Part shown: positions 43,801 to 60,512 of the stretch, one piece after another | How the letters are laid out: each line of letters opens with the position of its first letter | Numbering within the stretch: the stretch's first letter is position 1 | Virus record (IMG/VR): IMGVR_UViG_3300035670_000008 | Span: 152,564-216,563 of that record | Strand: one strand, 5' to 3' | DNA: 64,000 bases | Program-made: the position numbers and the translations under genes | Notes under the pieces: model-generated | Told to the model about the DNA's origin: nothing | Database searches by the model: none | Seen by the model: the letters and a program-made list of their open reading frames with translations, nothing else

Positions 43801-46641
43801 TCAATGGGTAAACTTCCCATTGCTTTGTTGGTTCCATTGGTGAATCAACGGCTTAAGTCGGGTGGTCAAGAACTTGATCGATTGATTAAGATCGACACTA
43901 AGTTGGTGTATGAACATGATGGAGTTCGTTCGGACAACGAGCTAGCCAAACTGACCGTCAAGAGAGGCTATACTTCTATCCGTCGGTTGACCCAGACGAT
44001 GTTAAAAGATTCCAGCAACACCGCCGCTAACATTTTAATTAAGGAAGTGTTGGGTGGGGATAAAGCGGCGACGCAGCTAGCTAAGCAGTACTACAAAGAT
44101 AACCAAATACAGATTGGTTACTACGGTGGTGACACTCGTAAGCGGATGGGCGGTACGTCAGCGGCTAAAGCCACCACCAAGTCTTTGTTCCAAGCTTGGA
44201 CAGAAATTCGACGGGGTAAAGGTGCTTACTTTGATGTAGCTAACCAAGCGCTGTCTGACCCTGGTCGTTTTAAACTACTAGGCGATACTTCCACAGCGTC
44301 TAAGATTGGAGTTACTTCCTCGGTATTAGGTAACGCCGGGACTTACTCCGGTGGTGAAATTTTAGTCTTTGACTTCGGCAGTAATAAAGACCACCGTGAC
44401 CCTAATAATCAGCGTCGTTTAGCTCAGGCAGCAGCTGAGGTCAACGCTTTGTTGGGTAAACGAACGACGGTGCAAGTAGCCAATCCATCTGCCCAGTATC
44501 AACAACAGCAGGCTCAACGGAATGTTAGCTACATTCCAGGGGTTGGCGCGGGTCGGTCGAGAATTGTAACCAGCCCCGCAAGTGGTGTAGTTACTAATAG
44601 AAATGACCCGGACAGCCGCGAGTTCGTAACGGGGAGTGATATTCAAATAGGCGGTATCCGTAACGGCGTGCCAATTTGGAATCCCATCCAAGGATTGACC
44701 CAGGTTAAGCCTAATAGCTTCCAAGGTCGAGGCAGAGGTAGAAGCGGAAAAGGTTGGGGTAACTTGACTCGCTACCGGATTGACTTAGGTAACAACCGAG
44801 TCGTAGAGATGTTGCTCGGTCACGGTGATCGCCCCTTTGAGGATTATATGGGTCAAGGCGGTATTGTACCATTCGCCTTACTTGGTTACCAAGGGGATAC
44901 AGGGCACGCAACAGGACCCCACGCTACTACTTCTTATAAACCGGTTAAGGGAACTAACGCGACTGCGGCTGACGCAAGATTAGTTGAACGCATGGTTCAG
45001 AATGCGTGGACCAGTAGAGGGTCTTGGGTTCGTGTCAACGGCGAGTGGCGTTTGGTTAAGTTGAACCAGGCCCAGCAGATGGGGTTACTTAATGGTACTC
45101 AACCTTCAGTTCAACCAAGTCAAACGGTTAAACCCCAACCAGTTAGTCAACCTGCTCGTAGCCAACAACAACTCAAGCAATCGTACCAACCTGCTGGTGA
45201 CTTCAAGCGAGTCAAAGCTAGTTACTACGGCGGTACCCAATTCCATGGTAAGCGAACGGCTTCAGGGGAAATCTACAACCAAAACGCGTTGACGGTAGCG
45301 GTTCCCCGGGATAAGCGGAATAGACCCATCATACCGTTTGGAACCGTCTTAGAAGTTATTAACCCAGCTAATGGCAAACGAGTCTTAGTTAAGGTTACTG
45401 ATACTGGTTCGTTTGGCAGTATGGGAAGAGGGTTAGACTTAAGCGTAGCCGCGGCTACAGCACTAGGTACGATTAAAGCTGGGGTGGCTAATGTTCAGTA
45501 TCGGATTGTCAAGCCTGTGGCTAACGCTAAACCACAAGAGCCAAAACTAGAGCTGCCTACTACTAAACCAAGTGATTGGGCTCCTCTTGTACCAAAGGCT
45601 GCGCCGCCGCCTGCTCCCAAACCTAAACCCAAGTTCAATATCTTTGACCCTAGAACCTGGCTAAGAAGCGAAGGGGTAAGACCTCAACAGACTTCTAACC
45701 CCGTAGCTACGATTAAATCTCCTGTCATAGAGGAACAGCAAAAAGGGGGTGATAACATGGTTCCTAGACAACGAATGGAGCCGGTGCTGGTCGCTGGGGA
45801 TTTATCTAAGCTTTCTGGTATTTTGCCTCCGGCAGATAAACTGCCTACGGCTAGTAACGTCTGGGGGATGCCTGGTCATCGGCCTGCGCCGACGGGTAAC
45901 TATCATGACTACGGCAAGCGCCCGCCGCAAAGAGAGGGCCCCATTTGGGGTCAGGCTGGTAGCAGACCGGAGCAGACCGGTAGCTACCAAGATTGGGAGC
46001 GGATACCCCAGCGTGACCGGACTACGCCGCCAGTACCTACGGTGCCGGGGCATCGTCCAGAGATATGGGATATTCTTCCCCCATTGGGGAATATTCCTGG
46101 AACGGTGGATATTCGTAACCCTAAAGCTAAGCCGACGATTCCGCCCAGTGAATGGGGAGTCGTTAAACCTAAGGCAAAGCCGAAAGTAAAAGCGACCCCC
46201 ACGCCTAGCCCGGCTCGTATTGAAGTGCCTATCGGAATGCCCAAAGCGGTGCTTGGACTAGCCGGTGTGCTAGCTAACGCAGTCGGGAAGAACTTTAACG
46301 CCGAGTTGGTGACGGAAGCCCAGGAGCTTTTGAATGATGCGGCGCAGGCAGCTGTGAGTTATGTAGAGCAAATTAAGGAGGCTAAGGCGGCGGCGATTCT
46401 TTCTTTAGAGCACCCACAGACGTTAGCTGGAGTTCGTCCGAGTAATCAACGTGGGCAGGAGGTTCGCACTAAGAAACAAGAGATAGTTGCTAGCTACGAA
46501 GACGGGAAGATTTATATTGGTCAGCAGATTCCTACTGAAGCAGTGCAGGCTCAGTTAGCCAACCGGGATATTAAGGTTCCGGTTCGTCCCGAGCACGAGC
46601 GAGCTGCCGCTCCACGGATGATGAATACGAAAGCAGACTAG
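25810..46641 (+). CDS. Giant (6943 aa) tape-measure-like/ejection protein with six C-terminal cell-wall-enzyme domains
   Basis: Uninterrupted ORF; long Ala/Gly-rich helical region with hydrophobic segments; C-terminal lysozyme-like, M23, VanY/M15B, beta-lactamase-like, second M23 and RlpA-DPBB motifs. Confidence 0.8.
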   Translation: MAIDYIDAVGGRLSVKLESSHLNESAGNMSIGGQVERTKEDPYGVVSYMHDTNRLARFVDGLRDIEVIQFAAPFNNIQRSVSPSPNPLSNMLEGAYNSAKWMQALFPSEVSMLMKTKQLKSLETDLTNFDSTVQNPIKLYEAREALLNNQIQAKYHKNKDGSFPEVTGAQLDRLQHSKLLEGLYSKEKQAQLQAEFKEKGFNVQAPTGKVQTTTAMFTDTSFLGISITGSGGALGSYEDYTLGFENPNIIRDLAYFRENKSTIDYYEREPVPGVTITGNLSIYKKRVEALREANEIQRILGKGKDGLFVYVASPSMDWNEQPREHNYRDTIQRKNVGAYIKELQKTGTQGILSLGIDKKRINIPAGEKTKLLQNAYIGDSRSGRRDHGNMQYINLRGTPKDRISKEAQEELARKGLLDKAVKGISTLSIGQYRIVGDESINQETTIDLNKVSPAYREAAEGIAQGSIGGKNFYQLRKDVAKEGIAGALLQEFYTPTFSDRQKRGWEQEGLLPNMPLSMPASFFRYFEPGTKTRIYTDRFKALTGYRPEGAQGYVLRTLDEKLSDPGLGNQINYMFRQRDLYEVGKGAVGTLAAGVGRFIDTATGFYTMQTIKARESGQLSGSLRKLYESRQRDPYEQTEKRGFFENLTTKAVAITGSTATAMASYFGVTHAYTMAKAAVEQVGVDYVLDSIASGKVGGASKLFLEQLLDESHSNLITGANIIYNAESGALRTIENTGKALDEYFDLSTRSSLKALQLDDELVDEVVKESDFIGGIRGKGIAAPTEQQAVLNLIGELDTSAAARDNTVAGLVTKKLEARLAEFAKRPGTATGAKPPAGEIRGWVTEIYKELGIHRDAGTIDLGRGVDHPTIAARVQQPAGFVNIASVRRMDTGNLHNMFIPLLDEVVFDKNNQQYRTAKENLLRLAKASPILSYKQTANNLSAASDLKIYNYGYERIRQLAEVFDELAEQLPANPLMWIKPIRQVFMANPLTGGQTRHSIEGGAETTLRYTFKDLIGPGFTGLINLQGQITRELVNINKVGLGKHLEGGFDLIKQSKELVQSQSQLVAIIQQSNSAQQAVEMLEGFNIGGNLTELGARKEFIRKQSRYDVLLRDRRRDYEELLKQEGGNPAFSGLRKGLLGIGTVLLVDRLFDTFVMRPQGVDLFDSILSDVIGSRSPAVEGREGDAAFQSLYDTEYSNALPNIVKYPSAAAGFFIGGHMFPSYEVAESSIYTAMRSKYGELGEAALSGTKFTLQAEGDRAIALGINKQIIKTKFGTAGALLGASAALIGSQLLANYVADVAKPAVRGFDNLASLATGVFTGQWGRWREPESGLDVDPVKGSAASVLAKLVHYSVRGQAKGYRKGGLVTAEQKTDTYLLGLTAQSMMQSDSKPPQLFYSFATQIASPFFQFASVGKVDPAKNTINLNAGLQLFPLLGAGLMLPSPLTPKVTYTSALPTRMVANYLKKYHEGVRYRYEPNTLGEIQEREAFHRMEEINKLSSMMLGGGVNLSLDTKPLVYLAMLGGLRDLSESSLAAFEQMQVNNRDLSPDKATKLYKELSNYETLFHAGRTGFNVLDTMSRAAYSLPMVMPNYLVKSATTLLGGAGRTQHILGPMARRASPYLLAFGILGASFRFNDKAMESELVTYADLQKLFKTGQYEGLNQKLIESQGINLTQTVIGSALLGAAISSSGAFESVRNFGAAYDRVQKITEQGGRAGYIDRQKHKLYSMWMEHLAEKGTVGLPLESGVDLVIESINTPSKASEAYEQISRRLVEPAEATLQTRLRDRQLIEAAREIDIPLVRTMPTRLGMLARRVAPLVVGAMVVSQMLATTDGFKQSPWMSLIRNLTDTGAGDLSAEQRAMLTKLGIKEPKYRPKDLGQSFRNIADYLVGAAMTPFGGNTFGLYQDNPNPFSPILGPLGVSLGSQDDVRPYLQSQSVAADISGSLYLLPAMSAGISEAMNLGPLLKYAGQLETHPKGSQIARALIRGAGLRTRAAKFKGGPSQREMRAASSPELQMALVRRYDRLRQLSWQTAGEHQWDVLAEFHRAGRILGNNQRGTIPGAEMNATRPATTMIYDTLGKLHLIPVLNDGTFITPRKNTETELLKFFRNLMSSGAGYGQGAAADFSADVTDTLIRRSQDRGGVPVLSFFSGLFQYAFNSFYDKNTEEIAADSNNVIGAGLMAGAAIALGASFVGTTFATGIQLVGALAALSDQGNISDVRSSIRDLRQGVKKRLRRSTFYIDQTNDRLVRPDGHNRIRALKDHNLTDEAVEQINQALTGQGRYGGYSPGNALETIIDADLRTTASKLVNTYHTGGGQTISTTVVEEVDALIKSLDTQLTVVVGGQQIHVGDLLTPTVAAEGATEAVVAHSVVKDKARLSTEIYEVLTSGKFKDTQQLEIERILLDHIDRGLAVTTADGRFEAAQATPNAYQPEAAVRAEQQAAAKKAAEQGVQTVEAYDPSVGYLRSKIQAKGYSGLMAEGAAGAMRAAGELINLKAYYEILSYTAAMGSSDVFDRRRSTQAAAQNTIQAFGMIIPMQYALKAAQASPGVAITAALTAAVIGGAALGNKQVRDTLGNIFKPVFSFGDKYVYKPAVQGLAGIYDAVTTAAPFIPQVLRPIAAVFDPIFSNMRSAAGNDPALSMLANFFVPEGVEQFYQRNAEIKGRTTPWGEAQEFYSNKELGQYYLSKMASRRRRGRSINAGIDSDLLHPFMQGKQVDIQYMNIFADRYLGGDGRIMEQFQTDRQMSNLLLMAIQRRQGMIDQYAEGSYMRKPYTKENVHHYFSTALALSKFSYAQTGSFIEAPINQAARGIGTTLGALQYVSELIPSEVGTKIKQGTVGAGIGFMVGAQLSHLGKDEGERRQYAAIGGSVGATVGGAGSVILAPSAQHLARRAFVALKKDKTVRAIAGGVATGAKYLTKQAGNALGMAGRWLNKAAPYLTFGALTTAAVYTNYDFLANLVDGDDRHKKGPLYNPLLKMGVSAGVGATTTLLGFTAVLGKNSNILASRLGKATGGVFRAGGKGANVLLLTGLTNFLLTNNVTGALPKTALRSAYTALNIGREEDFENYYSSGAAAASLVTGVVTPPVTNWIHGNYKRQLTGLLTPELNTIGPASAIPVDESQRAMALVTKLQGDLDFVEGRTSMKPVNTTAKMARLLGIAEDAVVQTNLEEEYLNVLSNKQLALRHARSLVDANLQHGFIHEGLRSIRAVARVSGHIGTLGLGYFLKGLSSSNSVPLSVLAMIMGGLGGFGYQHVNAKTANDRSWVNYMGAGLAGGYAAGTAAGLVTSFGSGNLPSVPLSKYPQRLMNLFARIVKAIDKGDVDDAISTKALPKWLDDIQGFSQKLLQDPRSAGLSESVNLKSVGTKVDWFKLSNKVLPVAAFSIDVLNLYTSVNQINNLQYGRSQAQFQQAYSSYQSTISTIAFSALMGIAARNTSFSRILGGTLQAGQLGYKRGLDESDNAYADAMVDNVAYQTSKRKQTMLALGAGGLSALSVSISALRANPSFAQRVLPKSLVALGSRPLAQSAAQQIDDFGMPVVQTAFTAYGLHRVAKPYEQRYEHSSNVSYQMAQRRGELMSLVLFATGSALLARKPSTKLGAAVTKYIPGLGAIGAGALKDLYTKDSFYQYEAMFLKSGITNDYAKNIIATKAAESTDDNLGITLGLTTLASIGLLVATKGKYKGPILAAPAVVASGLGYYNYSSTIHGEINERKQYEETGGLKPEEVAEYQEWRSSGELYPSRWKNTRQGVNYQKYKEAERRRITNFNLNYNAPVRRGYGFTPAPVDAKSIPDFVLRAAAMESHAKAIENHKANPVVLGASAAGLGLATWIVGTSRIPTLNVIPAAGKHYLSSWKTAVPFGTHVGTNLIEPVITGVAIAAEQRKINDLSKVPISVGIAGEMQAVRQSVDITTAQDKMTFLALMSQLPLSGETTLGSIVRGGLVHGIGHAIFESNIGMVREREFKQRVKVLAEARAKGVKVNSALLSKAVKAQATTDEGHAIAATLGIGQTATKLFMGGNVNAASSINASVEGAVSFLGIKAVINRAIGKRRFDNVVLNRSTRDDGRVLDSEPVANVVKQSAGPTGSKSSFEDDYLTNPYMLEAGATIGAYALITLGSSYLAARATKKAASIALNKAKQLLEERKLAAEPSVTTTAAEPAVAEPSPLASPEPAVSADTSAKGVSTVMDLYEETAPSPLASAEPPVGKPSYSADTSGQGVSAVLDLYESITPQTPAPETVAKPIVTAEPPSTSSQDVINKVTNPEPPTPTPTVTAPPSPEPTGPSKLESRKPRFGQIDPNLKGNISTGKKQALTAGKFLLGTSTDDHLSSSLVSLNRAINQVQNAGFASLGPAGASRYGQLMGERQAILLEQRRRQQQASQQVIETVAAEPEITPKPLEQPAPPQPTKPIPTTPKEPTVEPSLLDTTKAADYLPVPIYESFTDTSFLSRTSGKQTTLGRQKFLMAGGYMSTNSYSNVPELERAGGKDSADINKGDLSIRVSIKAQTVKDGKRVDIDNPYINIQHIWNIANDEYGRGGVITRDYILEINSFPGATVEEKAKSAYAYFEQQYARRMQELRSSNPAAIDKYMADAGHGDYLSWDYNNRQGDEGFLFKHEINPTGAVGKVTPPVENPTLPKPPQPQPTKTSDRTALLNIYETSTSGVEGSGSRDYDYTLPRGYGITYGNKPSGLDKDKFVERLDVDFKEREGGYRKIDLLGTKVEARTAALALKPMEVFNTSGIYTQTKNGKQLKVAYVSTMLGMASDVSEKDARKMVYHRDYFAEIKPEQDEQVVLRQLQAQYVEAVEWAKINAPDQIKDGHLVPRPEGKFVPIDLSNVGGLHTTIPQQDGGFIKPVPLPTSAERQVLSQQRADRVRRGQAKGIDYQMMLMDMVYGKAKESVTGVISKAKEISQSFVSGVGRAVRGTANQAWDGWSIFDRLEGLDARFGNQGMGGGAGFWTRFGQSAKYELSGRGIVEGGFGIGRNAQTGKVGIQGKGGAMALAGMGLQLADDILTLDWSRKNFAKSLGTVAKNQATSLAAGVAFGLVTAGLGALALSSVPALAALGIVGSAVLMGYGIYSLADQGFKVGGKAWEKFVLKRKRTAEEQKVYEQQSQVLSMGFGVGTFVYAGYNQIKSLQGARRAASVVNQAPVVPTVPVRQAVDVIDDVAPRTPVNPTRSGSVLKTAGKAVKVASTMYSVYQIGTGLHQAFTGKTEQAKDQGRRQAVREIGGLIGMRAGAKVGGYVGRAGGTAVTANPTGAIVGDVAGQAVGGYIGYQGGSNIAEQMYDNAMEMMYGKMNQRQRQEAVDKEVKRRSAGSQYNLEAIQGKEQKVAKQIERPRAWWRSDEEDTPWWKKLLQTIGKGVEALGNFLTRTKNAALDAADALSNWATGGVPLSSDALISGNLRAANSRGTSIIQAAQILGINPLDLATIVEFESDGNPHIRGGAGGNYIGLIQFGPNERKKYGYHSKMTFEEQMLGPVVNYFKDRFKSAGMSTEGASLEDLYTTVLAGNPKANRGSRDAFGTSPRSGVRKMTAPGADRDIALQKYFIVDGTLNAPTGFQVPSGARWASSMGVRDAKTLAQLPQRTGGNAYGMRIHPTQGRRKLHAGEDYAFPIGTPLSTATPAVVVFAGMLGNAGNTVVLRHSNGTYTRSLHMDKISVKAGDVLMPNQMYGTVGTTGDSTGPHLHFEEGSWDSKTNRFKAKPPTDLGRKSIQVGGKTVKVQATPPTSPQDYFNKVAPIQSGQTQSQQIITRTERKSTKVGGVTHYAYTNTTQKLVTIADSQVIGKQKQQLNETTAKQVNKMLAELKAATGVDLWILSGYRSVEYQQELWNKKKREGKSDAVIAKSLAIPGFSEHHTGDAFDISLQGQANLTAEQWASNPKLREARAWLDKNQSKYGFETSFLPGNKENVVSEPWHLRYVGPGSEYARQIKTNVTTSQQVINQVQGGTTTQQVALNQQQLTQGIEAIRKKYGLQSIYAQTKGGVTVGTVDKNKPAVVSSASMGKLPIALLVPLVNQRLKSGGQELDRLIKIDTKLVYEHDGVRSDNELAKLTVKRGYTSIRRLTQTMLKDSSNTAANILIKEVLGGDKAATQLAKQYYKDNQIQIGYYGGDTRKRMGGTSAAKATTKSLFQAWTEIRRGKGAYFDVANQALSDPGRFKLLGDTSTASKIGVTSSVLGNAGTYSGGEILVFDFGSNKDHRDPNNQRRLAQAAAEVNALLGKRTTVQVANPSAQYQQQQAQRNVSYIPGVGAGRSRIVTSPASGVVTNRNDPDSREFVTGSDIQIGGIRNGVPIWNPIQGLTQVKPNSFQGRGRGRSGKGWGNLTRYRIDLGNNRVVEMLLGHGDRPFEDYMGQGGIVPFALLGYQGDTGHATGPHATTSYKPVKGTNATAADARLVERMVQNAWTSRGSWVRVNGEWRLVKLNQAQQMGLLNGTQPSVQPSQTVKPQPVSQPARSQQQLKQSYQPAGDFKRVKASYYGGTQFHGKRTASGEIYNQNALTVAVPRDKRNRPIIPFGTVLEVINPANGKRVLVKVTDTGSFGSMGRGLDLSVAAATALGTIKAGVANVQYRIVKPVANAKPQEPKLELPTTKPSDWAPLVPKAAPPPAPKPKPKFNIFDPRTWLRSEGVRPQQTSNPVATIKSPVIEEQQKGGDNMVPRQRMEPVLVAGDLSKLSGILPPADKLPTASNVWGMPGHRPAPTGNYHDYGKRPPQREGPIWGQAGSRPEQTGSYQDWERIPQRDRTTPPVPTVPGHRPEIWDILPPLGNIPGTVDIRNPKAKPTIPPSEWGVVKPKAKPKVKATPTPSPARIEVPIGMPKAVLGLAGVLANAVGKNFNAELVTEAQELLNDAAQAAVSYVEQIKEAKAAAILSLEHPQTLAGVRPSNQRGQEVRTKKQEIVASYEDGKIYIGQQIPTEAVQAQLANRDIKVPVRPEHERAAAPRMMNTKAD
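42030..42430 (+). other. Lysozyme-like/lytic transglycosylase domain in the giant protein
   Basis: AAQILGINPLDLATIVEFES...YIGLIQFG...LEDLYTTVLAGNP (catalytic ES and GLxQ motifs). Confidence 0.7.
42560..42890 (+). other. Peptidase M23 domain in the giant protein
   Basis: GMRIHP...HAGED (HxxxD)...GNTVVLRH...LHM...STGPHLHFE (HxH). Confidence 0.9.
43150..43570 (+). other. VanY-like (M15B) D-Ala-D-Ala carboxypeptidase domain in the giant protein
   Basis: SGYRS..YQ, PGFSEHHTGDAFD (SxHxxGxAxD), EPWHLRYVG (ExxH). Confidence 0.9.
43700..44460 (+). other. Class A beta-lactamase-like/serine D,D-peptidase domain in the giant protein
   Basis: ASMGK (SxxK), DSSNTAAN (SxN), SKIG (KTG-like), in the correct order and spacing. 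Confidence 0.75.
44560..44960 (+). other. Second, divergent M23-like domain in the giant protein
   Basis: GSDI...GWGN...LLGH...LLGYQGDTGHATGPHAT; the first Zn-binding His and the last His appear substituted. Confidence 0.6.
45200..45510 (+). other. RlpA-like double-psi beta-barrel lytic transglycosylase domain in the giant protein
   Basis: ASYYG..FHGKRTASGE.YNQNALT.A...PFGT.LEV.N..NGK.VLVKVTDTG...RGLDLS.AAA..LG. Confidence 0.9.
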
Positions 46642-47105
46642 ACTTTAGTCTTTGTCTTCTTAGTAGTAGCGCCGGCCATGAACTTAGCGGCTCGGTCAGA
46701 TATACCCAACTGCTCGGGAGTCAGATTACCTCTAGTAAGTGCGTCGGCAATGTTCTGCTCGCGGGGAATCCATTGCATACTCCAACTCTCGAAGCAACTA
46801 AGTAGGTCTTTTGCGTAGGTGAGGGCAATATACAGATGAGCTTGTTTGGTATTCCAGTCACCGTTGGTGCATTTAACCACTAAGTCGCTATCTCCGTAGA
46901 TTTCGATGTCTCGAACGCCATGCTCGATAGCTTTGGTTAGCCCTAGGATTAGCCCACCGAACTCAGCGCTGTTGTTGGTGCCTGTGCCCATGAACTGGGA
47001 GTATTCGTGTTTTGTATCGTCTGGGGTAATTAAGACAGCGCCCGCGGTGCAATGGCCCGGGTTACTCGGTGCGGCGCTGCCATCAAAGAATAGAATTGCT
47101 TTCAT
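46638..47105 (-). CDS. rnhA: Ribonuclease HI
   Basis: FFDGS...NPG, TNNSAEF, YGDSDLV, WIPREQN.AD, supplying the DEDD catalytic residues. Confidence 0.92.
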   Translation of the reverse strand: MKAILFFDGSAAPSNPGHCTAGAVLITPDDTKHEYSQFMGTGTNNSAEFGGLILGLTKAIEHGVRDIEIYGDSDLVVKCTNGDWNTKQAHLYIALTYAKDLLSCFESWSMQWIPREQNIADALTRGNLTPEQLGISDRAAKFMAGATTKKTKTKV

Positions 47106-47177: not shown

Positions 47178-48317
47178 TTAGGCTGTTTGTAGGATGTTGT
47201 CGAACTTAACTGGGATTTCATCGACGTGGCAGTCGTCTGCAATTAACGCTTTAATTCCTTTAGCTAAACCTTCAGCAGCTTCGACAGACTCAAATAGAAT
47301 CGCGTCGTCAATGTCTTGACTGAAACTCAGCTTTAACGACTTGTCTAAAGCTGTCTTGAGAACTTTGGCGTTAAGATACCAAGTTTTACTCTGACGGTCG
47401 CAGAGGATTGTGTGCCCGGTACGATTCACCTCGAAACTAGTTCCGTCGGCATTAGCGTACTGAGATAAGAAGTCTTTAAGTTGCTTAGCTTCGTTATAGG
47501 GCATCAAAAACCGTTTCTGCCAATCGTCATCAAACACAATGCCGCTATCTGTCATAGACATCCAGCTCCAGGATTGGTTCTTCACCCGAGCTACCGTGAA
47601 TTGAGATTGATTAAACGCTTTGGTCGGTAGTTTATCGTCAGCCGGTAAGCTCTCTACCTGCGTAGCGTTTAGCTCTGAGCCACCTTTGATTAGTCCAAAG
47701 TCATACCCTAACCGGGCGGCTAATGCTTTAACGCCGCTACGCATCTGGTTATCGGTTAAGTTTACAGACCCCCGCCGCCGCTTAGCTAGCTCTAACTGAA
47801 CGATCAAGTTCCACTCTTCACAGGTATAGTGTGGGTTCTTTTTCGGCGCTCCGTTTACAGCTCCAGTACTTAAGCATAAAGTAATGCCATAGAGACCTGT
47901 AGTTGTATAGTATTTGATCGGGCGCGACTCACCTTTTGAGCTAACCCAGATGGACTCAGCCAGGAAATCGTAGGCTTTGATTAGATCTTCTGGTAGGTAC
48001 CCGTAACCCTCTTCTATGGTTCCGGTGATATAGTCTTTGTACCGCTGGCAGACGGAGTTCACTCGCACTTGCAGAAGAGTGCTTACTTTTTTATCAGTCG
48101 ATAGACGCAAGCCTAATAGGTCTAACCACTCTGTTTTAGTGAAAGGCCCTTGTCCAGCAATAGTGGAGAGAGGGTCAATTTCTAAGTTTTTAACGGTAGT
48201 GTAGGTTAGCCGCAGCTGCTCTACAGTCATTTCATTTAGAGTAATTCCCTTTCTTCCTCTGTAGGGAATCCACTTAATCTGTCCGGTTAGTTCTTTTAAT
48301 TTTTCGATGGATAACAC
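47178..48317 (-). CDS. Hypothetical protein (379 aa)
   Basis: Long ORF with GTG start and AGGAGG Shine-Dalgarno just upstream. Confidence 0.75.
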   Translation of the reverse strand: MLSIEKLKELTGQIKWIPYRGRKGITLNEMTVEQLRLTYTTVKNLEIDPLSTIAGQGPFTKTEWLDLLGLRLSTDKKVSTLLQVRVNSVCQRYKDYITGTIEEGYGYLPEDLIKAYDFLAESIWVSSKGESRPIKYYTTTGLYGITLCLSTGAVNGAPKKNPHYTCEEWNLIVQLELAKRRRGSVNLTDNQMRSGVKALAARLGYDFGLIKGGSELNATQVESLPADDKLPTKAFNQSQFTVARVKNQSWSWMSMTDSGIVFDDDWQKRFLMPYNEAKQLKDFLSQYANADGTSFEVNRTGHTILCDRQSKTWYLNAKVLKTALDKSLKLSFSQDIDDAILFESVEAAEGLAKGIKALIADDCHVDEIPVKFDNILQTA

Positions 48318-48753: not shown

Positions 48754-49461
48754 TTAAAGGAACCGACCTTCAGTCGCCAGGGTTAATTGAGCGCCGTTAT
48801 AGTTGAGCCTAAATGGCAACGGCTTGTTTTCTAGCAGCGCGTAGACAACTTCATTAGTCATTAATGCACTGGCAAAGTTGGCGTTGATTAATTGAGGGCT
48901 GGACACGGCTTCGTAGCCGCAGCTACCACGGGGCTGGTCGCTAGGGCGCTCGTAGTTGGTAGCTACGTCAAAGGGGTGAACCGGACGAAGTTTACCCTCC
49001 ACGCGGGAGTACCATAAGCAGGTAGCAGTATGGAAGTCGTTACCTGGTAGGACGCAGGCGAAGTCCAATACTGGGTCGAGGTCGTCTAGGTCTTTGATAA
49101 CTTCGTTACGGGCGGACTCAGAGTCAACGGCTAAGACTACCAGCACCGCGCCGGGTTCGTCGCAGTGAGTAGTGTACTCTTCCAGCTGGGTACGGAACTT
49201 GTGCCGCCTTACGAAGTCTGGTACCGCGCTAATATTACAGACGGACTCCAGTCTTTTAGCAGCAGCGGCAGCTTTGTTTATACCTACGAAGGCAGGGTCG
49301 AATAATTGCCTTACACTATTAGACGATTCATACTCGTCGCCGTCATACACACAGACGTTCTTGGTGCCTTCCTTGTGATAGGCTAACAGCCGGACTAAAG
49401 GCTCTAATAGAATCGAACCGGTTCCACCGGCGCCGATGACATGACAGCTAGAAAATTTCAT
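48754..49461 (-). CDS. E1-like ThiF-family ubiquitin-activating enzyme (PRTRC-ThiF type)
   Basis: VIGAGGTG nucleotide-binding loop, YDGD.YESSN..RQ, G.NKA, AVD...AR, candidate catalytic GSC and QLINAN. Confidence 0.88.
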   Translation of the reverse strand: MKFSSCHVIGAGGTGSILLEPLVRLLAYHKEGTKNVCVYDGDEYESSNSVRQLFDPAFVGINKAAAAAKRLESVCNISAVPDFVRRHKFRTQLEEYTTHCDEPGAVLVVLAVDSESARNEVIKDLDDLDPVLDFACVLPGNDFHTATCLWYSRVEGKLRPVHPFDVATNYERPSDQPRGSCGYEAVSSPQLINANFASALMTNEVVYALLENKPLPFRLNYNGAQLTLATEGRFL

Positions 49462-50392
49462 TCTTGGCTCCTAAGATTTCAAATTTGGATTTAGTGGATA
49501 AGGTTTTTGAGTAAAGCACCAAGTCGCGGCAGGTCGTTAAGTACCCGCTGGGAGTTTTCTTTATCCAGCCGACCACGTAGGTTTTATCTGGTTTAGGCCG
49601 GTAGTGGTAACTTAAAGGGACTGTCTCGAACAGTTTCCCACGGTCAGCGACCACCATCGCTTGTGGTCTTTTGGTAGCGACTTTCAGAGTTAGGTCTGGA
49701 GCCCGGAAGGAAGTGGCTTCTTCTAGACTAAGGTGCGGCGGGGTGGGACTGGTTCGCTGGGCATACTCTTCATGGTCGTAGCTACTAAGTAGAAGTTCCG
49801 TGCTGCGGTCGTTTGTCCCCTGGGCCAGGTCTCGGTTAAAGTTGCTGGTGAAGAACGTATTGAACGCTTCCAGGTGGTCACGCGGCCGTTCTGCCCTACC
49901 CCAACAAATTTCACCATCGCGGTAAACGTTAGCTAACCGGTAGGGCACGTAGGTGCCGTCTTTGGTAACCGCAAATAGTTTCCAGCTTCCATGGTATATA
50001 GACATCAAAGACTTCGGAACGTGGATAGTCTTTGTGCCGTATAAGTGCTCTTCAACTGTGCATCCCAACCTGCATTTGTTGTCAAATACGCGGAGTGTGC
50101 CACCATCGCAAAGCTCACACTCGTCCATGAAGGCTCTCCTATGTGTCTGCAGTACGGAGAATTTGTAATCGGCCCGCTCGAAGCCAGTTGTCTTGATAAA
50201 CAACTTAGTAATGTCATCTATAGGTTTGTAATAGAAACAACCTTTGCAGGTCTCTTCAAACGAGTCTTGGCTGTTATAGCGGATGTCAATGCTGAAGGGG
50301 TCAAACAAGCAGGAGATTTTTATCCTGTTGCTTTTGTTGATACTAAGAATGGCCCCCGCCGCGATGGACGGGAACCGAAGCACTTTGAACAT
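49448..50392 (-). CDS. Prokaryotic E2 family D-like conjugating enzyme (copy 2)
   Basis: PYRLANVYRDGEICWG...FNTFFTSNFNRDL; Cys near 49905. Confidence 0.75.
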   Translation of the reverse strand: MFKVLRFPSIAAGAILSINKSNRIKISCLFDPFSIDIRYNSQDSFEETCKGCFYYKPIDDITKLFIKTTGFERADYKFSVLQTHRRAFMDECELCDGGTLRVFDNKCRLGCTVEEHLYGTKTIHVPKSLMSIYHGSWKLFAVTKDGTYVPYRLANVYRDGEICWGRAERPRDHLEAFNTFFTSNFNRDLAQGTNDRSTELLLSSYDHEEYAQRTSPTPPHLSLEEATSFRAPDLTLKVATKRPQAMVVADRGKLFETVPLSYHYRPKPDKTYVVGWIKKTPSGYLTTCRDLVLYSKTLSTKSKFEILGAKNEIF

Positions 50393-50393
50393 A

Positions 50394-51584
50394 TCAGTAT
50401 AGGCAGGTGTTGATGATGTCTTCAGCTACAGGCATATAGACGTTCAAGTCTAGCTTCTGTGCTAACAGCGCAGCTAGCAACTCTTGACCGCGGGGACAAG
50501 CCATTAGAGCGTCGGCGTAGATATCCAAGTTGGTTAGAATATCTTTCAGTGTTTCCTTCTCTTCACCGTTCAGGTCAACGGTTCGCTGGTCACGGAAGTT
50601 CTTGAACTCAACTTCGTGCTTGAGTTCATGTTTGATGTCCTTCTCGTAATCGCGGAACTTATTAGCCTGGTTGGTGTAGGTATAGTTCCCGTACCAGCCG
50701 GCATTGTAGTAGGTGTCGTCCCAATCATCCCACTCGTCGATACCATAGAGCTGGTCGCGGGGCATGAGGGTAACATTCTTCGGGCCTTTGTACTTGGTAA
50801 CCCAGGAGTTAGCGCCGACGCCACGATAAGAGTAAGCAGTAGCTCTGGTAACGTAGGTGCTGGCTAACGAAGAAATCTCTGCTACCTTGCTGTCGTAAAT
50901 AGTCATCACCTTGCATTTGTCGTTCGAGCCGACGGTGGCTACGCCATCCAGGTTTAACAACAAGTCAGGCCGGAAGATATACCGCTTTTTGTTTAAGACG
51001 ATGGAGCAGCAGATGTCGAACGAATGCGGGGTAATCATTCCGATGGTGCAGTGCATCCCCGGTACGCCCAGTTCGCCTTGGTCATCCCGCCCGCTCCAAA
51101 AGGCGCTCATTGAGTTGTGAGAATGGATCGACCCGGAATGACAGTAGCCTTCCGGTGGAAATACCGTGTATTCTTCCCCTGTAAATAAGTCGCAGCTGTG
51201 GGTCGTAACGGCGTCTACAGTGACGCTAGTCACCGACTGCATCGGCACGACGACTTTCCACTGGCTGGGGTCATCTACTCCGCGCAGCAGGCACACTTGC
51301 ACTTCGGTGCTCCCGACGACGTAGGCGGAGCCATTGGTCGACATGTAGCTACGGAAGAAGGTGACAATGCCCTGGAGTAAGTGGAAAGGTAGACGGTCGA
51401 ACTGTTCTTTTAGCCACATGTAATCGACTTCGGCGGGCTTGTCGACTCCTTTCGGGTCTTTGATAGGCACGTAGTATTCACCCCAGTAGTTACTCTTCTG
51501 GAGTTTGAAGCAGCCGTCCTTCGTCCGAATGAACGGGGCTTTCTCTGTTTCTTTCACCGGTGCGGTGGTTAATGTTTGAGTCAT
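50394..51584 (-). CDS. JAB/JAMM metalloisopeptidase (Prok-JAB/PRTRC-A type)
   Basis: TEV...VVVPMQSVT...GSIHSHNSMSAFWSGRDD (E...HxH-x7-S-x2-D). Confidence 0.88.
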   Translation of the reverse strand: MTQTLTTAPVKETEKAPFIRTKDGCFKLQKSNYWGEYYVPIKDPKGVDKPAEVDYMWLKEQFDRLPFHLLQGIVTFFRSYMSTNGSAYVVGSTEVQVCLLRGVDDPSQWKVVVPMQSVTSVTVDAVTTHSCDLFTGEEYTVFPPEGYCHSGSIHSHNSMSAFWSGRDDQGELGVPGMHCTIGMITPHSFDICCSIVLNKKRYIFRPDLLLNLDGVATVGSNDKCKVMTIYDSKVAEISSLASTYVTRATAYSYRGVGANSWVTKYKGPKNVTLMPRDQLYGIDEWDDWDDTYYNAGWYGNYTYTNQANKFRDYEKDIKHELKHEVEFKNFRDQRTVDLNGEEKETLKDILTNLDIYADALMACPRGQELLAALLAQKLDLNVYMPVAEDIINTCLY

Positions 51585-51600
51585 AGTTTAGTAGGCTCCG

Positions 51601-53166
51601 TTAGAAGGTTGCTAGTTGCTCTTGCTGCTCTTGCTGCTGCCGCTCTCTCATCAACTGTTTTAGTTCAGCCATGGTGAAATACCCCAGTCCGCTTACAGAG
51701 TTGATTTCATTAGCTTCTAGACCAGTCTCTTCTTGAATTAGTTGGCAGTACATCAAGGCCTGCTCTAAGATGTAATGCTGTTTTTCTCTTGACGACCATT
51801 CCTCAGATACTTCAGAGTCCACAGTTGGAACCTCAGCGGCTTCTAGTTTTTTCTGTAGCCGCTCCTGGATTTTGTCAGTCTTTGCTGCGTTTGCTTTAAG
51901 TTTGTTGAGGTCGATAACCTTTAGGTCACTCAACTTACCATCAGCTAAGAAACGAACCAATGCTTTCCCCGTTGAGTTATTCACTTTGTACACAAACGCC
52001 AGGCTGAAGCTAATGTAGTTTGTGAAAGAGAATCTAACAGAGCAGTCGTAGACTGGGTACGGTCGGAACTTTAAGGACATTTCGTTCTTTAAAGAGCCGG
52101 TTACAGGTAACAAAGGAGACTGGCACATCAATAGCCCAATTACGTCGTTGTCGGCGTAGTCACAGTCGTATGAGCCGTCGTAAAGAGTAAAGCCTTTTTC
52201 CAGGTGGTTTAGGAAACTCTCGTTGGCGGTGAAGCGGTAGTAGTGTTCGACCTTGGGGTGACGGTCGTCGTCGCTCGGGTTATACACCAAAGACGGGGTT
52301 CCTTCATCGTCGTCTTCGTCTTCGTACTCCCGGTTTTCGGAGTCGTACGGCGCGTACGAATCGTTGTACTCATGGGGAACCAAGTCGTAGTTGAAGGAGC
52401 TACTGAAGTAAGTAGCGTAGGCACCGCGGGGGTCGTAGGGACGTCCCTGCTCACCCCAGCAGACGTCTCCATCGCCGTATACGTTACCCAACAAGTAAGG
52501 TACCCCGATAGCTGTGACAGTCTTTACTTCTTGGTCGTTGAAGGTCTTTACTTTTTCCTCTATGTCCCGTATGGCGAAGACCTTAAAGTTACCACAACCA
52601 ACTTCTTCGGCGTTGATACGTCTTAAATCTACTGTGCTCTGCCACAGTAAGTTAGGTACTCTTAGATTCACGGCGGCAGAGAAGGTCTCTCCAGCCCGGC
52701 ATGGCTTACCATCTCTCAGGCTTTGCTCTTCTTCTATGCCGAGTAGGTGGCTATTCGACAGACCTGGGCAAGCGTTGGGTAACTTACGGAAGTATTCTTG
52801 GTAATAGGGGGTGAAGTCTACCCAACCCAACATTGCCCTGATTTGGTCTTCTTTTGAGCGGTTGAGCAGGTAAGTTCTGCGGGAATAGAAGCTGCCAGTT
52901 GTGCTGCGAAGGGTTCTATTAAAGAACGCTTCATCGTCGTTGAGTTTCTTTGTTAAATGGGTTTTGATGGCGTCCGCTGCTTTGCTACGAGCGTTCTGGC
53001 TGCACTGTCTACAGCGGTTTGCAGTGATATCACAGAGGAGTTCGTCGTCTAGCAGGATTTCTTTCTCTTCTGCTTCAGTGACGTTATAAACCACCAGCGA
53101 GCTGTTATTCGCTAGCACGTTAACAAAGACAGTCTTAGTGCCTTTCGGGAAATAGAAAACTTTCAT
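51601..53166 (-). CDS. Prokaryotic E2 family D-like conjugating enzyme (copy 1, 521 aa with extensions)
   Basis: PYLLGNVYGDGDVCWG...YATYFSSSFNYDL; Cys near 52460. Confidence 0.75.
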   Translation of the reverse strand: MKVFYFPKGTKTVFVNVLANNSSLVVYNVTEAEEKEILLDDELLCDITANRCRQCSQNARSKAADAIKTHLTKKLNDDEAFFNRTLRSTTGSFYSRRTYLLNRSKEDQIRAMLGWVDFTPYYQEYFRKLPNACPGLSNSHLLGIEEEQSLRDGKPCRAGETFSAAVNLRVPNLLWQSTVDLRRINAEEVGCGNFKVFAIRDIEEKVKTFNDQEVKTVTAIGVPYLLGNVYGDGDVCWGEQGRPYDPRGAYATYFSSSFNYDLVPHEYNDSYAPYDSENREYEDEDDDEGTPSLVYNPSDDDRHPKVEHYYRFTANESFLNHLEKGFTLYDGSYDCDYADNDVIGLLMCQSPLLPVTGSLKNEMSLKFRPYPVYDCSVRFSFTNYISFSLAFVYKVNNSTGKALVRFLADGKLSDLKVIDLNKLKANAAKTDKIQERLQKKLEAAEVPTVDSEVSEEWSSREKQHYILEQALMYCQLIQEETGLEANEINSVSGLGYFTMAELKQLMRERQQQEQQEQLATF

Positions 53167-53182: not shown

Positions 53183-53219
53183 AAAAAAAGAGAAGACCCC
53201 GCGTTAGCAGGGCCCTCTC
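53183..53219 (-). terminator. Intrinsic terminator between Ubl and the first E2 gene
   Basis: Minus strand GAGAGGGCCCTGC-TAAC-GCGGGGTCTTCTC followed by T7. Confidence 0.7.
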
Positions 53220-53239: not shown

Positions 53240-53584
53240 CTACGCGCCTTTGGTGTCCGCGCTGGCAGAGGCGGTGACTAGTTCACCCGGTTTGGGGACG
53301 TAGTCTTTGGAGACGTAGGTGGTCTGAATCTTGAAGTTCAGCCGGCTGACGTCGCTGACGCCAATGGAGCCACGGTACTCCTGCACGATTTGCTGCAGGG
53401 TTTTGGTGCCGTCCACCGTAGCCACGAACTCTTCGGTTCCGTAGCGGACGATGATTTGGGACTCAGGATTGAACTGCTCTTCAGTGAACTCACCTTCGTC
53501 GAAATCGGGCTCGAAGTCCGCGAAGAGTTCTTCTTCGGGAGCTTCGGTGGAGTTAACGGGAGCGTTGGTTTCGTAATCAGACAT
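53240..53584 (-). CDS. Ubiquitin-like (beta-grasp) modifier protein with acidic N-terminal extension
   Basis: Beta-grasp pattern IIVRYG...ATVDGTKTLQQIVQEY...LNFKI...YVPKPGELVT; C-terminus DTKG-A; first gene of an E2/JAB/E2/E1 operon; GAGGA Shine-Dalgarno. Confidence 0.75.
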   Translation of the reverse strand: MSDYETNAPVNSTEAPEEELFADFEPDFDEGEFTEEQFNPESQIIVRYGTEEFVATVDGTKTLQQIVQEYRGSIGVSDVSRLNFKIQTTYVSKDYVPKPGELVTASASADTKGA

Positions 53585-55160: not shown

Positions 55161-55559
55161 TTAATTAGATTTAGCTTCTAGTATTTTAGTGGCTTTTGCA
55201 GCTAGCTTCTCAAAGACCTCCGCGGGGAGACTTTCTTGGCAGACAATCATAAAGACTTTACGGAACTCTTTAGTGCTGCTGTAAATAGCTGCGTTGGACC
55301 TTTTTCTTTCTCTTAGCCGTCTTTCCTTTTCGAGTTGCACCCGCTTAAGGCTGGAAATCCGGTAGCGTTTCGCTGACTTTGCTCGGGCTTCCCATTCTTT
55401 GTCGTTCTGCCCTCTTACTTCAGCGTATTCCAGGTGTGTATTGATGGTAGCTATCTCTTCGTGTAGCTGCAGTTCTAAGTCCTCCAGCTCCTCTTCTGAT
55501 AGCTCTTGAGTGTTTAATGTGTTAGGGGGCTGTTTTGACAGTCCACTTAAGTTATCCAT
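55161..55559 (-). CDS. Hypothetical coiled-coil protein
   Basis: 132-aa helical ORF overlapping the upstream stop. Confidence 0.65.
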   Translation of the reverse strand: MDNLSGLSKQPPNTLNTQELSEEELEDLELQLHEEIATINTHLEYAEVRGQNDKEWEARAKSAKRYRISSLKRVQLEKERRLRERKRSNAAIYSSTKEFRKVFMIVCQESLPAEVFEKLAAKATKILEAKSN

Positions 55560-56160
55560 GGGTTTTAAGGTGGTCTAAGAACAAAGCTAAGCAGCTAACT
55601 AAGTCTTCTAGTCCCTTAGCAAGCTTACTGTCTAACGCCTCTTCGATGGCTTCTCTTTCAACTTCACACCACAAGTCTTCTACCTGACGGTACAACTTAT
55701 CATCGTCAGATACTATGTAGGACTCGTATAATTTTGGATGGTTACTCTTTAACCACTCGTCCTTGATAGTTGAGTATTCTTCTTCTACTTCTTTAACGAG
55801 TCCGTTTCTATACACTGCTTTGCCGGTGAAGTCGCATCCAGGTTCGTCGTAGGTGAGTACAATAACAGCGTCAGGGAATTGTTTAGAGATAGCGTTAAAC
55901 CCTGCTGAAGGAGGCGACCAGGGAGTCCAACAGGATATCTCTACACAGTCGTCGCTGCTGGAGTAAGTGGGTTCTTGCAAGTCCCATTTAGTCCCCCAAT
56001 TATCATAACGCCAGTCGACAGTATCTTCTCTGGGCGGCGGCACGAAGATGCTTAGTAACCCAAAATCTTCTTTATAGTTTTTGAGGATGCTATCAAACGT
56101 GCGTTTCTGCTCGGCAGTTAGGTTGTAGATGCGGATGGAGTTGTTGCAATAGTTAGGCAT
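55552..56160 (-). CDS. DUF1281/YubB-like ferredoxin-fold protein
   Basis: MPNYCNN...DWRYDNWGTKWD...TPWSPP...YDEPGCDF.G. Confidence 0.75.
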   Translation of the reverse strand: MPNYCNNSIRIYNLTAEQKRTFDSILKNYKEDFGLLSIFVPPPREDTVDWRYDNWGTKWDLQEPTYSSSDDCVEISCWTPWSPPSAGFNAISKQFPDAVIVLTYDEPGCDFTGKAVYRNGLVKEVEEEYSTIKDEWLKSNHPKLYESYIVSDDDKLYRQVEDLWCEVEREAIEEALDSKLAKGLEDLVSCLALFLDHLKTHG

Positions 56161-60230: not shown

Positions 60231-60512
60231 TTAGTATGCTGCTTTGATTTGCTGTAGTAGCTCGGCGCGGGTCATACGACCGTAGTACTTAATTTTAACT
60301 TCCCGAGCCTTGACGCGTAGCTGCCGGATTGTTAGTGAGTCCAACGCTACTGTTTCTTTTTTGGCTTTCGCTTTGCTTTTTTCAGTCGCTTCATTGGGTA
60401 CGCTGGTTCCCAGTTGTGGACTCCCAGCGAACGCGGCGGGTGCTTTGTAGTGCTCTAGGATAATACCAATCACTAGAGCATAGAGAAGAATAGATACGAT
60501 TAGTTCTTGCAT
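60231..60512 (-). CDS. Membrane-anchored protein with Rho N-terminal (HEH) domain
   Basis: N-terminal hydrophobic helix LIVSILLYALVIGIIL; C-terminal LDSLTIRQLRVKAREVKIKYYGRMTRAELLQQI. Confidence 0.7.
   Translation of the reverse strand: MQELIVSILLYALVIGIILEHYKAPAAFAGSPQLGTSVPNEATEKSKAKAKKETVALDSLTIRQLRVKAREVKIKYYGRMTRAELLQQIKAAY

What the first reader, a model, noticed from the sequence alone, without database searches (positions are those of the whole stretch)
49448..53166. Two divergent E2-like paralogs with different long flanks and no E3
Seen: both keep the Cys-containing core but differ outside it (521 aa with CRQC, an acidic loop and a coiled-coil tail; 314 aa with CKGC and CELC). No RING or HECT-like gene is nearby. 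Inference: each E2 selects its own substrates through fused extensions, or they act as a relay or heterodimer in which one behaves like an E3.
Basis: partly seen in the sequence, partly recalled or inferred. Interest (0 to 1): 0.6.

Follow-up and report, generated by a model that had tools for sequence, protein, structure and literature searches.

The report
Phage ubiquitin-like operon with two E2s
A 217-kb phage, probably of cyanobacteria, carries a complete ubiquitin-like protein-tagging operon with two different conjugating enzymes instead of the usual one; related phages share this layout, and its targets are unknown.

Summary
Both ORFs (minus strand, 521 aa and 314 aa) belong to the prokaryotic E2 family Pfam Prok-E2_D. 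Both keep the family's invariant Asn-x7-Cys active-site spacing, which is the same as in canonical E2s.

They sit in a tight five-gene operon:
- a ubiquitin-like precursor (114 aa, ending Lys-Gly plus one variable residue);
- E2-long;
- a JAB/JAMM peptidase with an intact motif;
- E2-short;
- a minimal ThiF-type E1 (235 aa).

No RING, HECT or ParB gene was found in the phage record.

The N-terminal 190-260 residues, including CRQC and CKGC, are homologous (hhalign 99%). Only the C-terminal parts are unrelated.

The two-E2 layout recurs in six divergent phage lineages. All 43 other related loci examined carry one E2 (11 viral contigs, 30 bacterial genome loci, and the closer relatives L010 and L015). 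Both E2s are under purifying selection but evolve much faster than the Ubl, E1 and JAB.

Best reading: one Ubl and one E1 feed two active E2s that act as their own E3s, each choosing targets through its own C-terminal domain. A relay or heterodimer is neither supported nor excluded. Targets and biological role are unknown. I rate it a new variant of a known kind, the PRTRC-like cassettes.

The parts
53240..53584 (-). Ubiquitin-like modifier precursor, 114 aa. It has an acidic/aromatic N-terminal tail (about 1-43), a beta-grasp core (about 44-113), an invariant C-terminal Lys-Gly (G113) and one variable last residue.
   Evidence: The C-terminus ends ..KG plus A, N, C, Y, Y or N in six lineages. 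For residues 42-114, every named cluster among the ten nearest rows to the Atlas's own model (seven of them) is a beta-grasp family (ThiS, Ub-RnfH, RBD, UBX, ubiquitin/Rad60-SLD, Ub-Mut7C, DUF2604; the first six as I know them, DUF2604 not checked), TM 0.73-0.82. It is 76-81% identical between phages whose E2-long is only about 30% identical. There is no Pfam or PDB sequence hit. It is the only copy in the genome.
53183..53219 (-). Terminator-like GC-rich hairpin plus a T-run between the Ubl gene and E2-long; probably an attenuator that keeps Ubl in excess over the enzymes.
   Evidence: 13-bp stem with 8 GC pairs, followed by T7. A hairpin plus T-run sits at the same place in L006, L004, L003, L010 and L013, with different stem sequences. 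Function is inferred.
51601..53166 (-). E2-long, 521 aa. Order of parts: N-terminal beta domain; Cys-rich module (C52, C55, C133, C156) with a helical insert; E2 core (N228, C236 at window 52453-52485); acidic loop 266-305; beta-rich C-terminal domain; poorly conserved helical tail.
   Evidence: Orthologues pass Prok-E2_D. hhalign to E2-short gives 99%. Only two full-length representatives turned up among 1.84 billion proteins, plus fragments. The AF2 model has low confidence (pLDDT 54).
50394..51584 (-). JAB/JAMM metallopeptidase, 396 aa, with a complete motif (E94; H154-x-H156-x7-S164-x2-D167, window 51084-51125). The N-terminal domain has invariant R20 and W34. About 190 aa of C-terminal extension follow.
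   Evidence: Alignment; motif checked. Hits to Prok-JAB and PRTRC_A are weak. An N-terminal domain with a conserved Arg and Trp is described for the JAB of operon type 6d in PMC1779556.
49448..50392 (-). E2-short, 314 aa. Order of parts: N-terminal beta domain; Cys-rich module (C49, C52, C92, C95, C107); E2 core (N155, C163 at window 49898-49930); C-terminal domain with a well-conserved last 54 residues. Its start lies 1 nt after the JAB stop, and its end overlaps the E1 start by 14 nt.
   Evidence: Prok-E2_D 26.8 bits against a cut-off of 25. Alignment; junctions. Full-length orthologues in L013, L029 and L031 score 120-148 bits over the whole profile.
48754..49461 (-). Minimal ThiF-type E1, 235 aa. 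It has the Gly-rich nucleotide loop (residues 10-15, window 49417-49434) and invariant Cys residues including C181. It has no rhodanese, UFD or fused E2 domain.
   Evidence: ThiF PF00899, E 3e-14. The best NCBIfam hit is PRTRC_ThiF at 61.7 bits, below the 144.75 cut-off. The best PDB relatives are UBA5 and the NEDD8 E1. It is 62-97% identical across lineages.

Best explanation
This is a phage-encoded ubiquitin-like conjugation operon of the PRTRC-like (Prok-E2_D) kind in which one modifier and one E1 serve two catalytically competent E2s.

Proposed steps:
1. The Ubl gene is transcribed in excess, because a conserved terminator-like hairpin follows it.
2. The JAB peptidase removes the single residue after Gly113.
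3. The minimal ThiF-type E1 adenylates that Gly.
4. The Ubl is passed as a thioester to Cys236 of E2-long or Cys163 of E2-short.
5. Each E2 acts as its own E3. It binds its targets through its own, unrelated C-terminal domain and transfers the Ubl to them.
6. The JAB may also reverse the mark.

What is shown: gene content, order and coupling; family membership; retention of active-site residues; purifying selection; recurrence of the two-E2 layout in related phages.

What is inferred: every chemical step, the parallel rather than serial use of the two E2s, and the existence of distinct target sets.

The targets are unknown. The operon lies among small early-type genes, and in relatives it sits next to nucleotide-metabolism, NblA and sigma-factor genes. 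I therefore favour host or replication proteins over virion parts.
For: Operon anatomy:
- Five adjacent minus-strand genes with 1-nt spacing (JAB/E2-short) or a 14-nt overlap (E2-short/E1).
- E2 family: Prok-E2_D hits; 37 of 45 relatives also hit it.
- N, C and G are invariant in 100 relatives, and both paralogs carry them. The Asn-x7-Cys spacing is that of canonical E2s (sequence plus established E2 knowledge).
- The JAMM motif is intact.
- The Ubl model is beta-grasp, and every lineage ends KG plus one variable residue.

Both E2s are functional genes:
- dN/dS is 0.21 and 0.19 against a close relative.
- Both are kept in six lineages: the window clade, L004, L003, L013, L029 and L031.

Specificity role:
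- Identity between the window and L004 is Ubl 81%, E1 77%, JAB 63%, E2-short 43% and E2-long 30%.
- The C-terminal parts are unrelated.
- No RING or HECT was found.

One E2 is enough for the family's chemistry: 11 other viral loci, 30 bacterial loci, L010 and L015 all carry a single E2 with JAB and E1.
Against: - Nothing here shows charging, conjugation or any substrate.
- The E2 folds could not be confirmed. The AF2 models had pLDDT 47 and 54, and fold searches were empty.
- The strict adjacency and overlap of E2-short with E1 in every two-E2 lineage could mean E2-short is the only E2 the E1 loads, which would favour a relay.
- The two paralogs differ at a family-conserved position after the active-site loop. 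It is R or K in 76 of 100 members; E2-long has R247 and E2-short has L174 preceded by H173. They may therefore differ in chemistry and not only in targets.
- No RNA data exist for this phage.
Confidence: 0.5

Rival explanations
1. Serial relay. The E1 loads E2-short, which passes the Ubl by transthiolation to Cys236 of E2-long. E2-long then acts like a HECT/RBR-type catalytic E3 and uses its large C-terminal region to bind substrates.
For: The E2-short gene overlaps the E1 gene in every two-E2 lineage: by 14 nt in the window, L004 and L013, and by 4 nt in L029 and L031. This recalls the fused E2-E1 proteins of other bacterial operons (PMC1779556). E2-long carries the larger, faster-evolving extension.
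Against: L010 has Ubl, E2-long, JAB and E1 but no E2-short in 97.5 kb, so E2-long is presumably loaded directly there. That record is 66% complete. Single-E2 loci are the rule in the family. The complex prediction for E2-long with E2-short gave no verdict, which counts neither way.
Confidence: 0.2
2. Obligate heterodimer in the manner of Ubc13-Mms2. One paralog is a non-catalytic cofactor that positions an acceptor, for example for Ubl chain building.
For: Two paralogs of one fold are encoded in one operon. The Ubl has several invariant Lys residues that could be chain acceptors.
Against: Neither paralog has lost the catalytic Cys or Asn in any orthologue, unlike UEV or RWD proteins. No interface was predicted, but that run gave no verdict.
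Confidence: 0.08
3. The cassette does not tag proteins. The Ubl/E1 pair could serve as a sulfur carrier, or the Ubl could be an assembly chaperone processed by the JAB, like the lambda tail assembly protein I with gpK. The E2-like proteins would then have another role.
For: ThiS/MoaD-type Ubls with E1 and JAB exist in sulfur pathways and in phage tail modules (PMC1779556). The cassette lies next to the 6,943-aa virion-type gene in the window, L004 and L006.
Against: The E1 has no rhodanese domain. Two E2s with invariant Asn-x7-Cys are hard to explain without thioester transfer. In L010, L013 and L031 the cassette is not next to structural genes.
Confidence: 0.1
4. A redundant or decaying duplicate: one E2 is dispensable.
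For: Most relatives manage with one E2.
Against: Both genes are intact and under purifying selection. Both are retained across lineages whose orthologues are only 30-43% identical. They never pair as sisters in the tree.
Confidence: 0.04

Closest known systems
PRTRC cassette (ParB-related, ThiF-related cassette; operon type 6d of Iyer, Burroughs and Aravind 2006, PMC1779556) on plasmids and integrative elements
   Same: It has the same four protein kinds: a small Ubl with a C-terminal Gly, a Prok-E2_D-type E2 lacking the HP of the HPN motif, a JAB with an N-terminal domain carrying a conserved Arg and Trp, and a ThiF-type E1. The best NCBIfam hits for three of the proteins are PRTRC_B, PRTRC_A and PRTRC_ThiF.
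   Different: All three scores are far below the curated cut-offs (16.8 vs 131, 18.1 vs 102, 61.7 vs 145). There is no ParB in the genome. No alpha-helical partner protein was recognised. There are two E2s instead of one. The element is a phage. The E2s carry a Cys-rich N-terminal module and long C-terminal domains.
Single-E2 E2-JAB-E1 modules in other viral contigs and in cyanobacterial, Chloroflexota and Lachnospiraceae genomes
   Same: They share the E2 core signature and gene order.
   Different: They have one E2 of about 220-290 aa and a larger E1 (250-470 aa). The window's clade adds a second E2 between JAB and E1 and enlarges the first to about 500-527 aa.
Bil, CBASS Cap2/Cap3 and Bub bacterial ubiquitination-like defence pathways
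   Same: They follow the same E1/E2/Ubl/peptidase logic without a separate E3, with the E2 contacting the target directly (my reading of the Bil and CBASS literature; Bub from PMC11601596).
   Different: Those are host defence systems with one E2. Bub uses oxyester chemistry. PADLOC models match only the E1 region weakly, and neither E2 at all.
Eukaryotic E2/E3 hybrid enzymes (UBE2O, BIRC6) and the Ubc13-Mms2 pair
   Same: This is an analogy of mechanism only: an E2 core fused to large substrate-binding regions, or two E2-fold proteins working together.
   Different: There is no sequence relationship beyond the E2 fold family. Neither paralog here is Cys-less. This rests on my knowledge and was not tested.

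Membership tests
Pfam Prok-E2_D (PF14460), UBC-like E2 superfamily | Match to the family model at or above the gathering score (25 bits) | tested here: met
   E2-short scores 26.8 bits. The window's E2-long has no hit itself, but its orthologues score 42.7 and 33.3 bits. E2-long aligns to E2-short at 99% by hhalign.
Pfam Prok-E2_D (PF14460), UBC-like E2 superfamily | Conserved catalytic Cys, with the Asn eight residues upstream as in canonical E2s | tested here: met
   N228/C236 and N155/C163 are present, and both positions are invariant in 100 relatives.
Pfam Prok-E2_D (PF14460), UBC-like E2 superfamily | E2 (UBC) three-dimensional fold | tested here: inconclusive
   The AF2 models have pLDDT 46.7 and 54.4. 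Foldseek found nothing. The predicted order of secondary structure (four-strand meander, Cys loop, helices) is compatible only.
Pfam Prok-E2_D (PF14460), UBC-like E2 superfamily | Gene neighbourhood with a Ubl, an E1 and a JAB | tested here: met
PRTRC system (NCBIfam TIGR03735-03737 etc. plus ParB) | Proteins reach the curated cut-offs of PRTRC_A, PRTRC_B and PRTRC_ThiF | tested here: not met
   18.1 vs 101.8, 16.8 vs 131.45 and 61.7 vs 144.75 bits.
PRTRC system (NCBIfam TIGR03735-03737 etc. plus ParB) | An associated ParB homologue | tested here: not met
   There is no ParB_N match in the 216.6-kb record, while 11 of 14 control genomes ring.
PRTRC system (NCBIfam TIGR03735-03737 etc. plus ParB) | JAB with an N-terminal domain bearing a conserved Arg and Trp (PMC1779556) | tested here: met
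   R20 and W34 are invariant in five lineages. Their equivalence to the published positions was not checked by alignment.
Inactive E2 variants (UEV / RWD type) | Loss of the catalytic Cys | tested here: not met
   Both paralogs keep the Cys in every orthologue.
RING / HECT E3 ligases | A RING or HECT domain in the operon or genome | tested here: not met
   None was found in 19 neighbouring ORFs or in the whole record. The four-Cys module of the E2s has too few ligands for a binuclear RING; that last point is an inference.
Known anti-phage Ubl systems (CBASS Cap2/Cap3 and others in PADLOC 2.0) | Match of the E2 proteins to the defence-system models | tested here: not met
   Neither E2 has a PADLOC hit. 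Only the E1 matches the E1 part of the E1-E2 models, at E 4e-7. Bil and Bub may be missing from this 2023 library.

The most novel reading that the evidence does not exclude
A clade of large phages, probably cyanophages, runs its own ubiquitin-like system on the host. It would use a near-invariant modifier with an acidic tail and two E2 enzymes that double as E3s, each aimed at a different set of host (or defence) proteins. That would make it a viral protein-tagging takeover mechanism in prokaryotes, with the fast-evolving E2 extensions as the arms-race surface.
Probability: 0.3. Interest if true: 0.85.

Novelty: new variant of a known kind. Interest (0 to 1): 0.6.

Why it matters
I know of no experimentally defined function for PRTRC-type Ubl/E1/E2/JAB cassettes, and none turned up in the paper searches. 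The bacterial ubiquitin-like systems studied so far are host defences with one E2.

Here the whole machinery is on the phage side. The modifier is conserved like ubiquitin: about 80% identical where the E2s are 30-43% identical. A natural split into two E2s recurs in six lineages.

That gives a compact five-gene system in which E2-encoded substrate choice without an E3 can be tested directly. It also gives a handle on what phages tag in their hosts.

Tried and rejected
Searches and predictions that gave nothing usable:
- Structure prediction of both E2s from 4-5-row alignments gave low-confidence models, and both prediction jobs were then spent.
- Foldseek against the PDB gave nothing at E <= 0.001.
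- VIA-align wide on the E2-long model gave only a weak COMM-domain-like match for residues 358-521 (Z 6.2, 63 residues, below the tool's stated noise level of 7-8). It is a lead for an oligomerisation element at most.
- The Atlas search of E2-long 300-521 gave nothing usable.
- Complex prediction on E2-long plus E2-short returned 'no answer' (ipSAE 0.00). I do not count it for or against binding. Two earlier tries found the machine busy.
- PDB sequence searches with the E2, Ubl and JAB profiles found no relatives.
- PHROGs gave nothing for either E2, and PADLOC gave nothing for them.
- blastn of the operon against GenBank phages found no match.
- The first locus scan used patterns from the acidic Ubl tail and found nothing.
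- Paper searches found no study of phage PRTRC-like or two-E2 cassettes.

Ideas tested and dropped:
- The careful tree does not resolve deep branches. E2-long is one clade (89/96), but the seven E2-short-type rows are recovered as one group in only 12% of bootstrap trees. I therefore rest E2-short orthology on full-length profile matches, not on the tree.
- I considered that His173 of E2-short is the 'downstream His' of PRTRC E2s. I dropped it as unproven, because that column is His in only 9 of 100 family members.

Not run: read laying, because no RNA run holds the region.
Full report
WHERE THE WINDOW COMES FROM

The window is the last 64 kb of a 216,563-bp IMG/VR virus record that CheckV rates 96% complete. 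The record encodes NblA, a phycobilisome-degradation protein, at 42.5 bits, over the Pfam cut-off; among the control genomes only Synechococcus rings. I read this as a large cyanophage, which is an inference. The DNA occurs in subsurface, soil and freshwater metagenomes, and no RNA run holds it.

THE OBSERVATION

Both ORFs are real and lie on the minus strand: E2-long at 51601-53166 (521 aa) and E2-short at 49448-50392 (314 aa).

The shared core is 55% identical over 42 residues, E 8e-13. The genome holds only these two copies.

E2-short passes the Pfam Prok-E2_D gathering score. The window's E2-long has no Pfam hit, but its orthologues pass at 42.7 and 33.3 bits.

A profile search of 1.84 billion representative proteins found 224 relatives. 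Only two are full-length E2-long representatives, apart from fragments; the rest share the core. Of 45 proteins tested, 37 hit Prok-E2_D.

In 100-row alignments only three residues are invariant, in an N-x7-C-x-G pattern. Both window proteins have them: N228/C236/G238 and N155/C163/G165. The Asn-to-Cys spacing equals that of the HPN...C active site of canonical E2s, as I know it. The fold itself could not be confirmed, because the models had pLDDT 47 and 54 and fold searches were empty.

CORRECTION TO 'DIFFERENT FLANKS'

hhalign aligns E2-long 1-264 with E2-short 2-191 at 99% probability, E 3e-18. This span covers an N-terminal beta domain, the first CxxC (CRQC falls on CKGC), a second Cys pair and the core. 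E2-long has an extra helical insert.

Four Cys are invariant before the core in E2-long (C52, C55, C133, C156), and five in E2-short. About 45% of the wider family has a CxxC plus at least two further Cys in this region. I infer a single zinc site, which is too small to be a RING.

Only the C-terminal parts are unrelated (hhalign probability 0.1%).

THE OPERON

The two E2s are part of five tightly packed genes:
- A 114-aa protein at 53240-53584.
- E2-long.
- A 396-aa JAB with the full JAMM motif and an N-terminal domain with invariant Arg and Trp.
- E2-short.
- A 235-aa ThiF-type E1 whose start overlaps the end of E2-short by 14 nt.

The 114-aa protein is the modifier:
- For residues 42-114, every named cluster among the nearest rows to its Atlas model is a beta-grasp family (ThiS, Ub-RnfH, ubiquitin/Rad60-SLD and others), TM 0.73-0.82.
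- In six lineages it ends in an invariant Lys-Gly followed by one variable residue. This is the pattern of a precursor trimmed by a peptidase.
- It also carries a conserved acidic/aromatic N-terminal tail.

A GC-rich hairpin plus T-run follows its gene in all six lineages, with different stem sequences. That suggests the Ubl is made in excess of the enzymes.

No RING, HECT or ParB was found.

RELATIVES

The same five-gene order occurs in:
- close relatives L006, L007 and L008;
- a 104-kb metagenome contig (L004);
- a 6-kb contig (L003).

More distant phage contigs also have two E2s:
- L013: E2 of 272 aa, a 175-aa ORF, Ubl, JAB, E2-short type, E1.
- L031: NblA, E2 of 360 aa, split JAB, E2-short type, E1, with the Ubl 7 kb away.
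- L029: partial E2, split JAB, E2-short type, E1.

The E2 next to the E1 in these three matches the whole E2-short profile at 120-148 bits.

Two closer relatives have a single E2:
- L010 has Ubl, E2-long, JAB and E1 but no E2-short in 97.5 kb; the record is 66% complete.
- L015 has JAB, one E2 and E1.

Eleven other viral loci and thirty bacterial genome loci all have one short E2 followed by E1, with a JAB detected between them in most (7 of 11 viral loci, 16 of 30 bacterial); the bacterial ones come from cyanobacteria, Chloroflexota and Lachnospiraceae.

In the tree, E2-long forms a clade (89/96) and never pairs with E2-short. Deeper branches are unresolved. The two-E2 layout is therefore an old, retained feature of one phage group, not a recent tandem copy.

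RATES

- Between the window and L004, identity is Ubl 81%, E1 77%, JAB 63%, E2-short 43% and E2-long 30%.
- Against the close relative L006, dN/dS is 0.06-0.11 for E1, Ubl and JAB, 0.19 for E2-short, and 0.21 for E2-long (0.50 in its tail).

Both E2s are constrained, and both are the variable members of the set. That is what one expects of the parts that meet changing partners.

MECHANISM

I propose one Ubl, one E1 and one trimming or deconjugating JAB feeding two active E2s, each of which chooses targets through its own C-terminal domain without an E3. Only the anatomy and conservation are shown; the chemistry and the parallel use are inferred.

The main rival is a relay from E2-short to E2-long. 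The conserved E2-short/E1 overlap favours it, and L010 weakens it. A Cys-less cofactor model does not fit. The complex prediction gave no verdict.

The two paralogs also differ at a conserved position after the active-site loop. It is R or K in 76 of 100 family members; E2-long has R247, and E2-short has H173-L174. They may therefore differ in chemistry too.

COMPARISON WITH KNOWN SYSTEMS

The nearest described system is the PRTRC cassette, operon type 6d of PMC1779556. It shares the four protein kinds and the JAB N-terminal Arg/Trp. This cassette fails every curated PRTRC cut-off, lacks ParB, sits on a phage and has two enlarged E2s.

It is not a PADLOC-listed defence system. Bub pathways use oxyester chemistry and one E2 (PMC11601596).

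I found no paper on phage cassettes of this type.

VERDICT

This is a new variant of a known kind. Interest is 0.6.

Noticed in passing
window 25810-46641 (+): A single 6,943-aa ORF ends 4 nt inside the convergent RNase H gene. Relatives have 6,860-7,866-aa versions whose products hit Peptidase_M23, VanY and DPBB_1. It is probably a giant virion-associated, cell-wall-degrading protein.
   Followed up: partly
L031:9526-9815 (also the gap L029:2255-2716): In two related phage contigs the JAB gene is split exactly at the HxH motif by about 300-460 nt. In L031 the insert matches the group I intron model RF00028 over its full length, at 26 bits and E 1.2e-4 (below the gathering score of 50). The exons were not joined.
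   Followed up: partly
G000:C1:75983-76297 (outside the window; loci L032, L033): There are two adjacent NblA-domain matches over the Pfam cut-off in the window's own genome. L031 also has an NblA gene directly upstream of its first E2. This points to a cyanobacterial host.
   Followed up: partly
window 53456-53584 (-), Ubl residues 1-43: The modifier carries a strongly acidic, aromatic N-terminal tail with an LF..(F/Y)E..F motif conserved in six lineages. E2-long has its own conserved acidic loop (52252-52371). The purpose is unknown.
   Followed up: no
window 47178-48317 (-) and 46638-47105 (-): A 379-aa protein with no family hit and an RNase H (RVT_3/RNase_H) gene follow the E1 on the same strand. 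The 379-aa gene is kept in L006 but not in L004, so it is probably not part of the cassette.
   Followed up: partly
window 55552-56160 (-) and 60231-60512 (-): Among the small upstream genes, one has a DUF1281_C (Api92-like ferredoxin-like) domain and one has a Rho_N domain. The other eight scanned have no Pfam hit.
   Followed up: no
L013:1-4366 and L031:15544-16752: The related phage contigs carry ribonucleotide reductase genes interrupted by inteins with LAGLIDADG endonucleases (L013) and an IS605 OrfB/Cas12f-like TnpB gene (L031).
   Followed up: no
window 51601-52092 (-), E2-long residues 358-521: There is a weak structural resemblance of the low-confidence model to COMM domains, including a bacterial COMMD-like protein (Z 6.2, rmsd 2.5, 63 residues). 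This is below the tool's noise level and is only a lead for an oligomerisation element.
   Followed up: no
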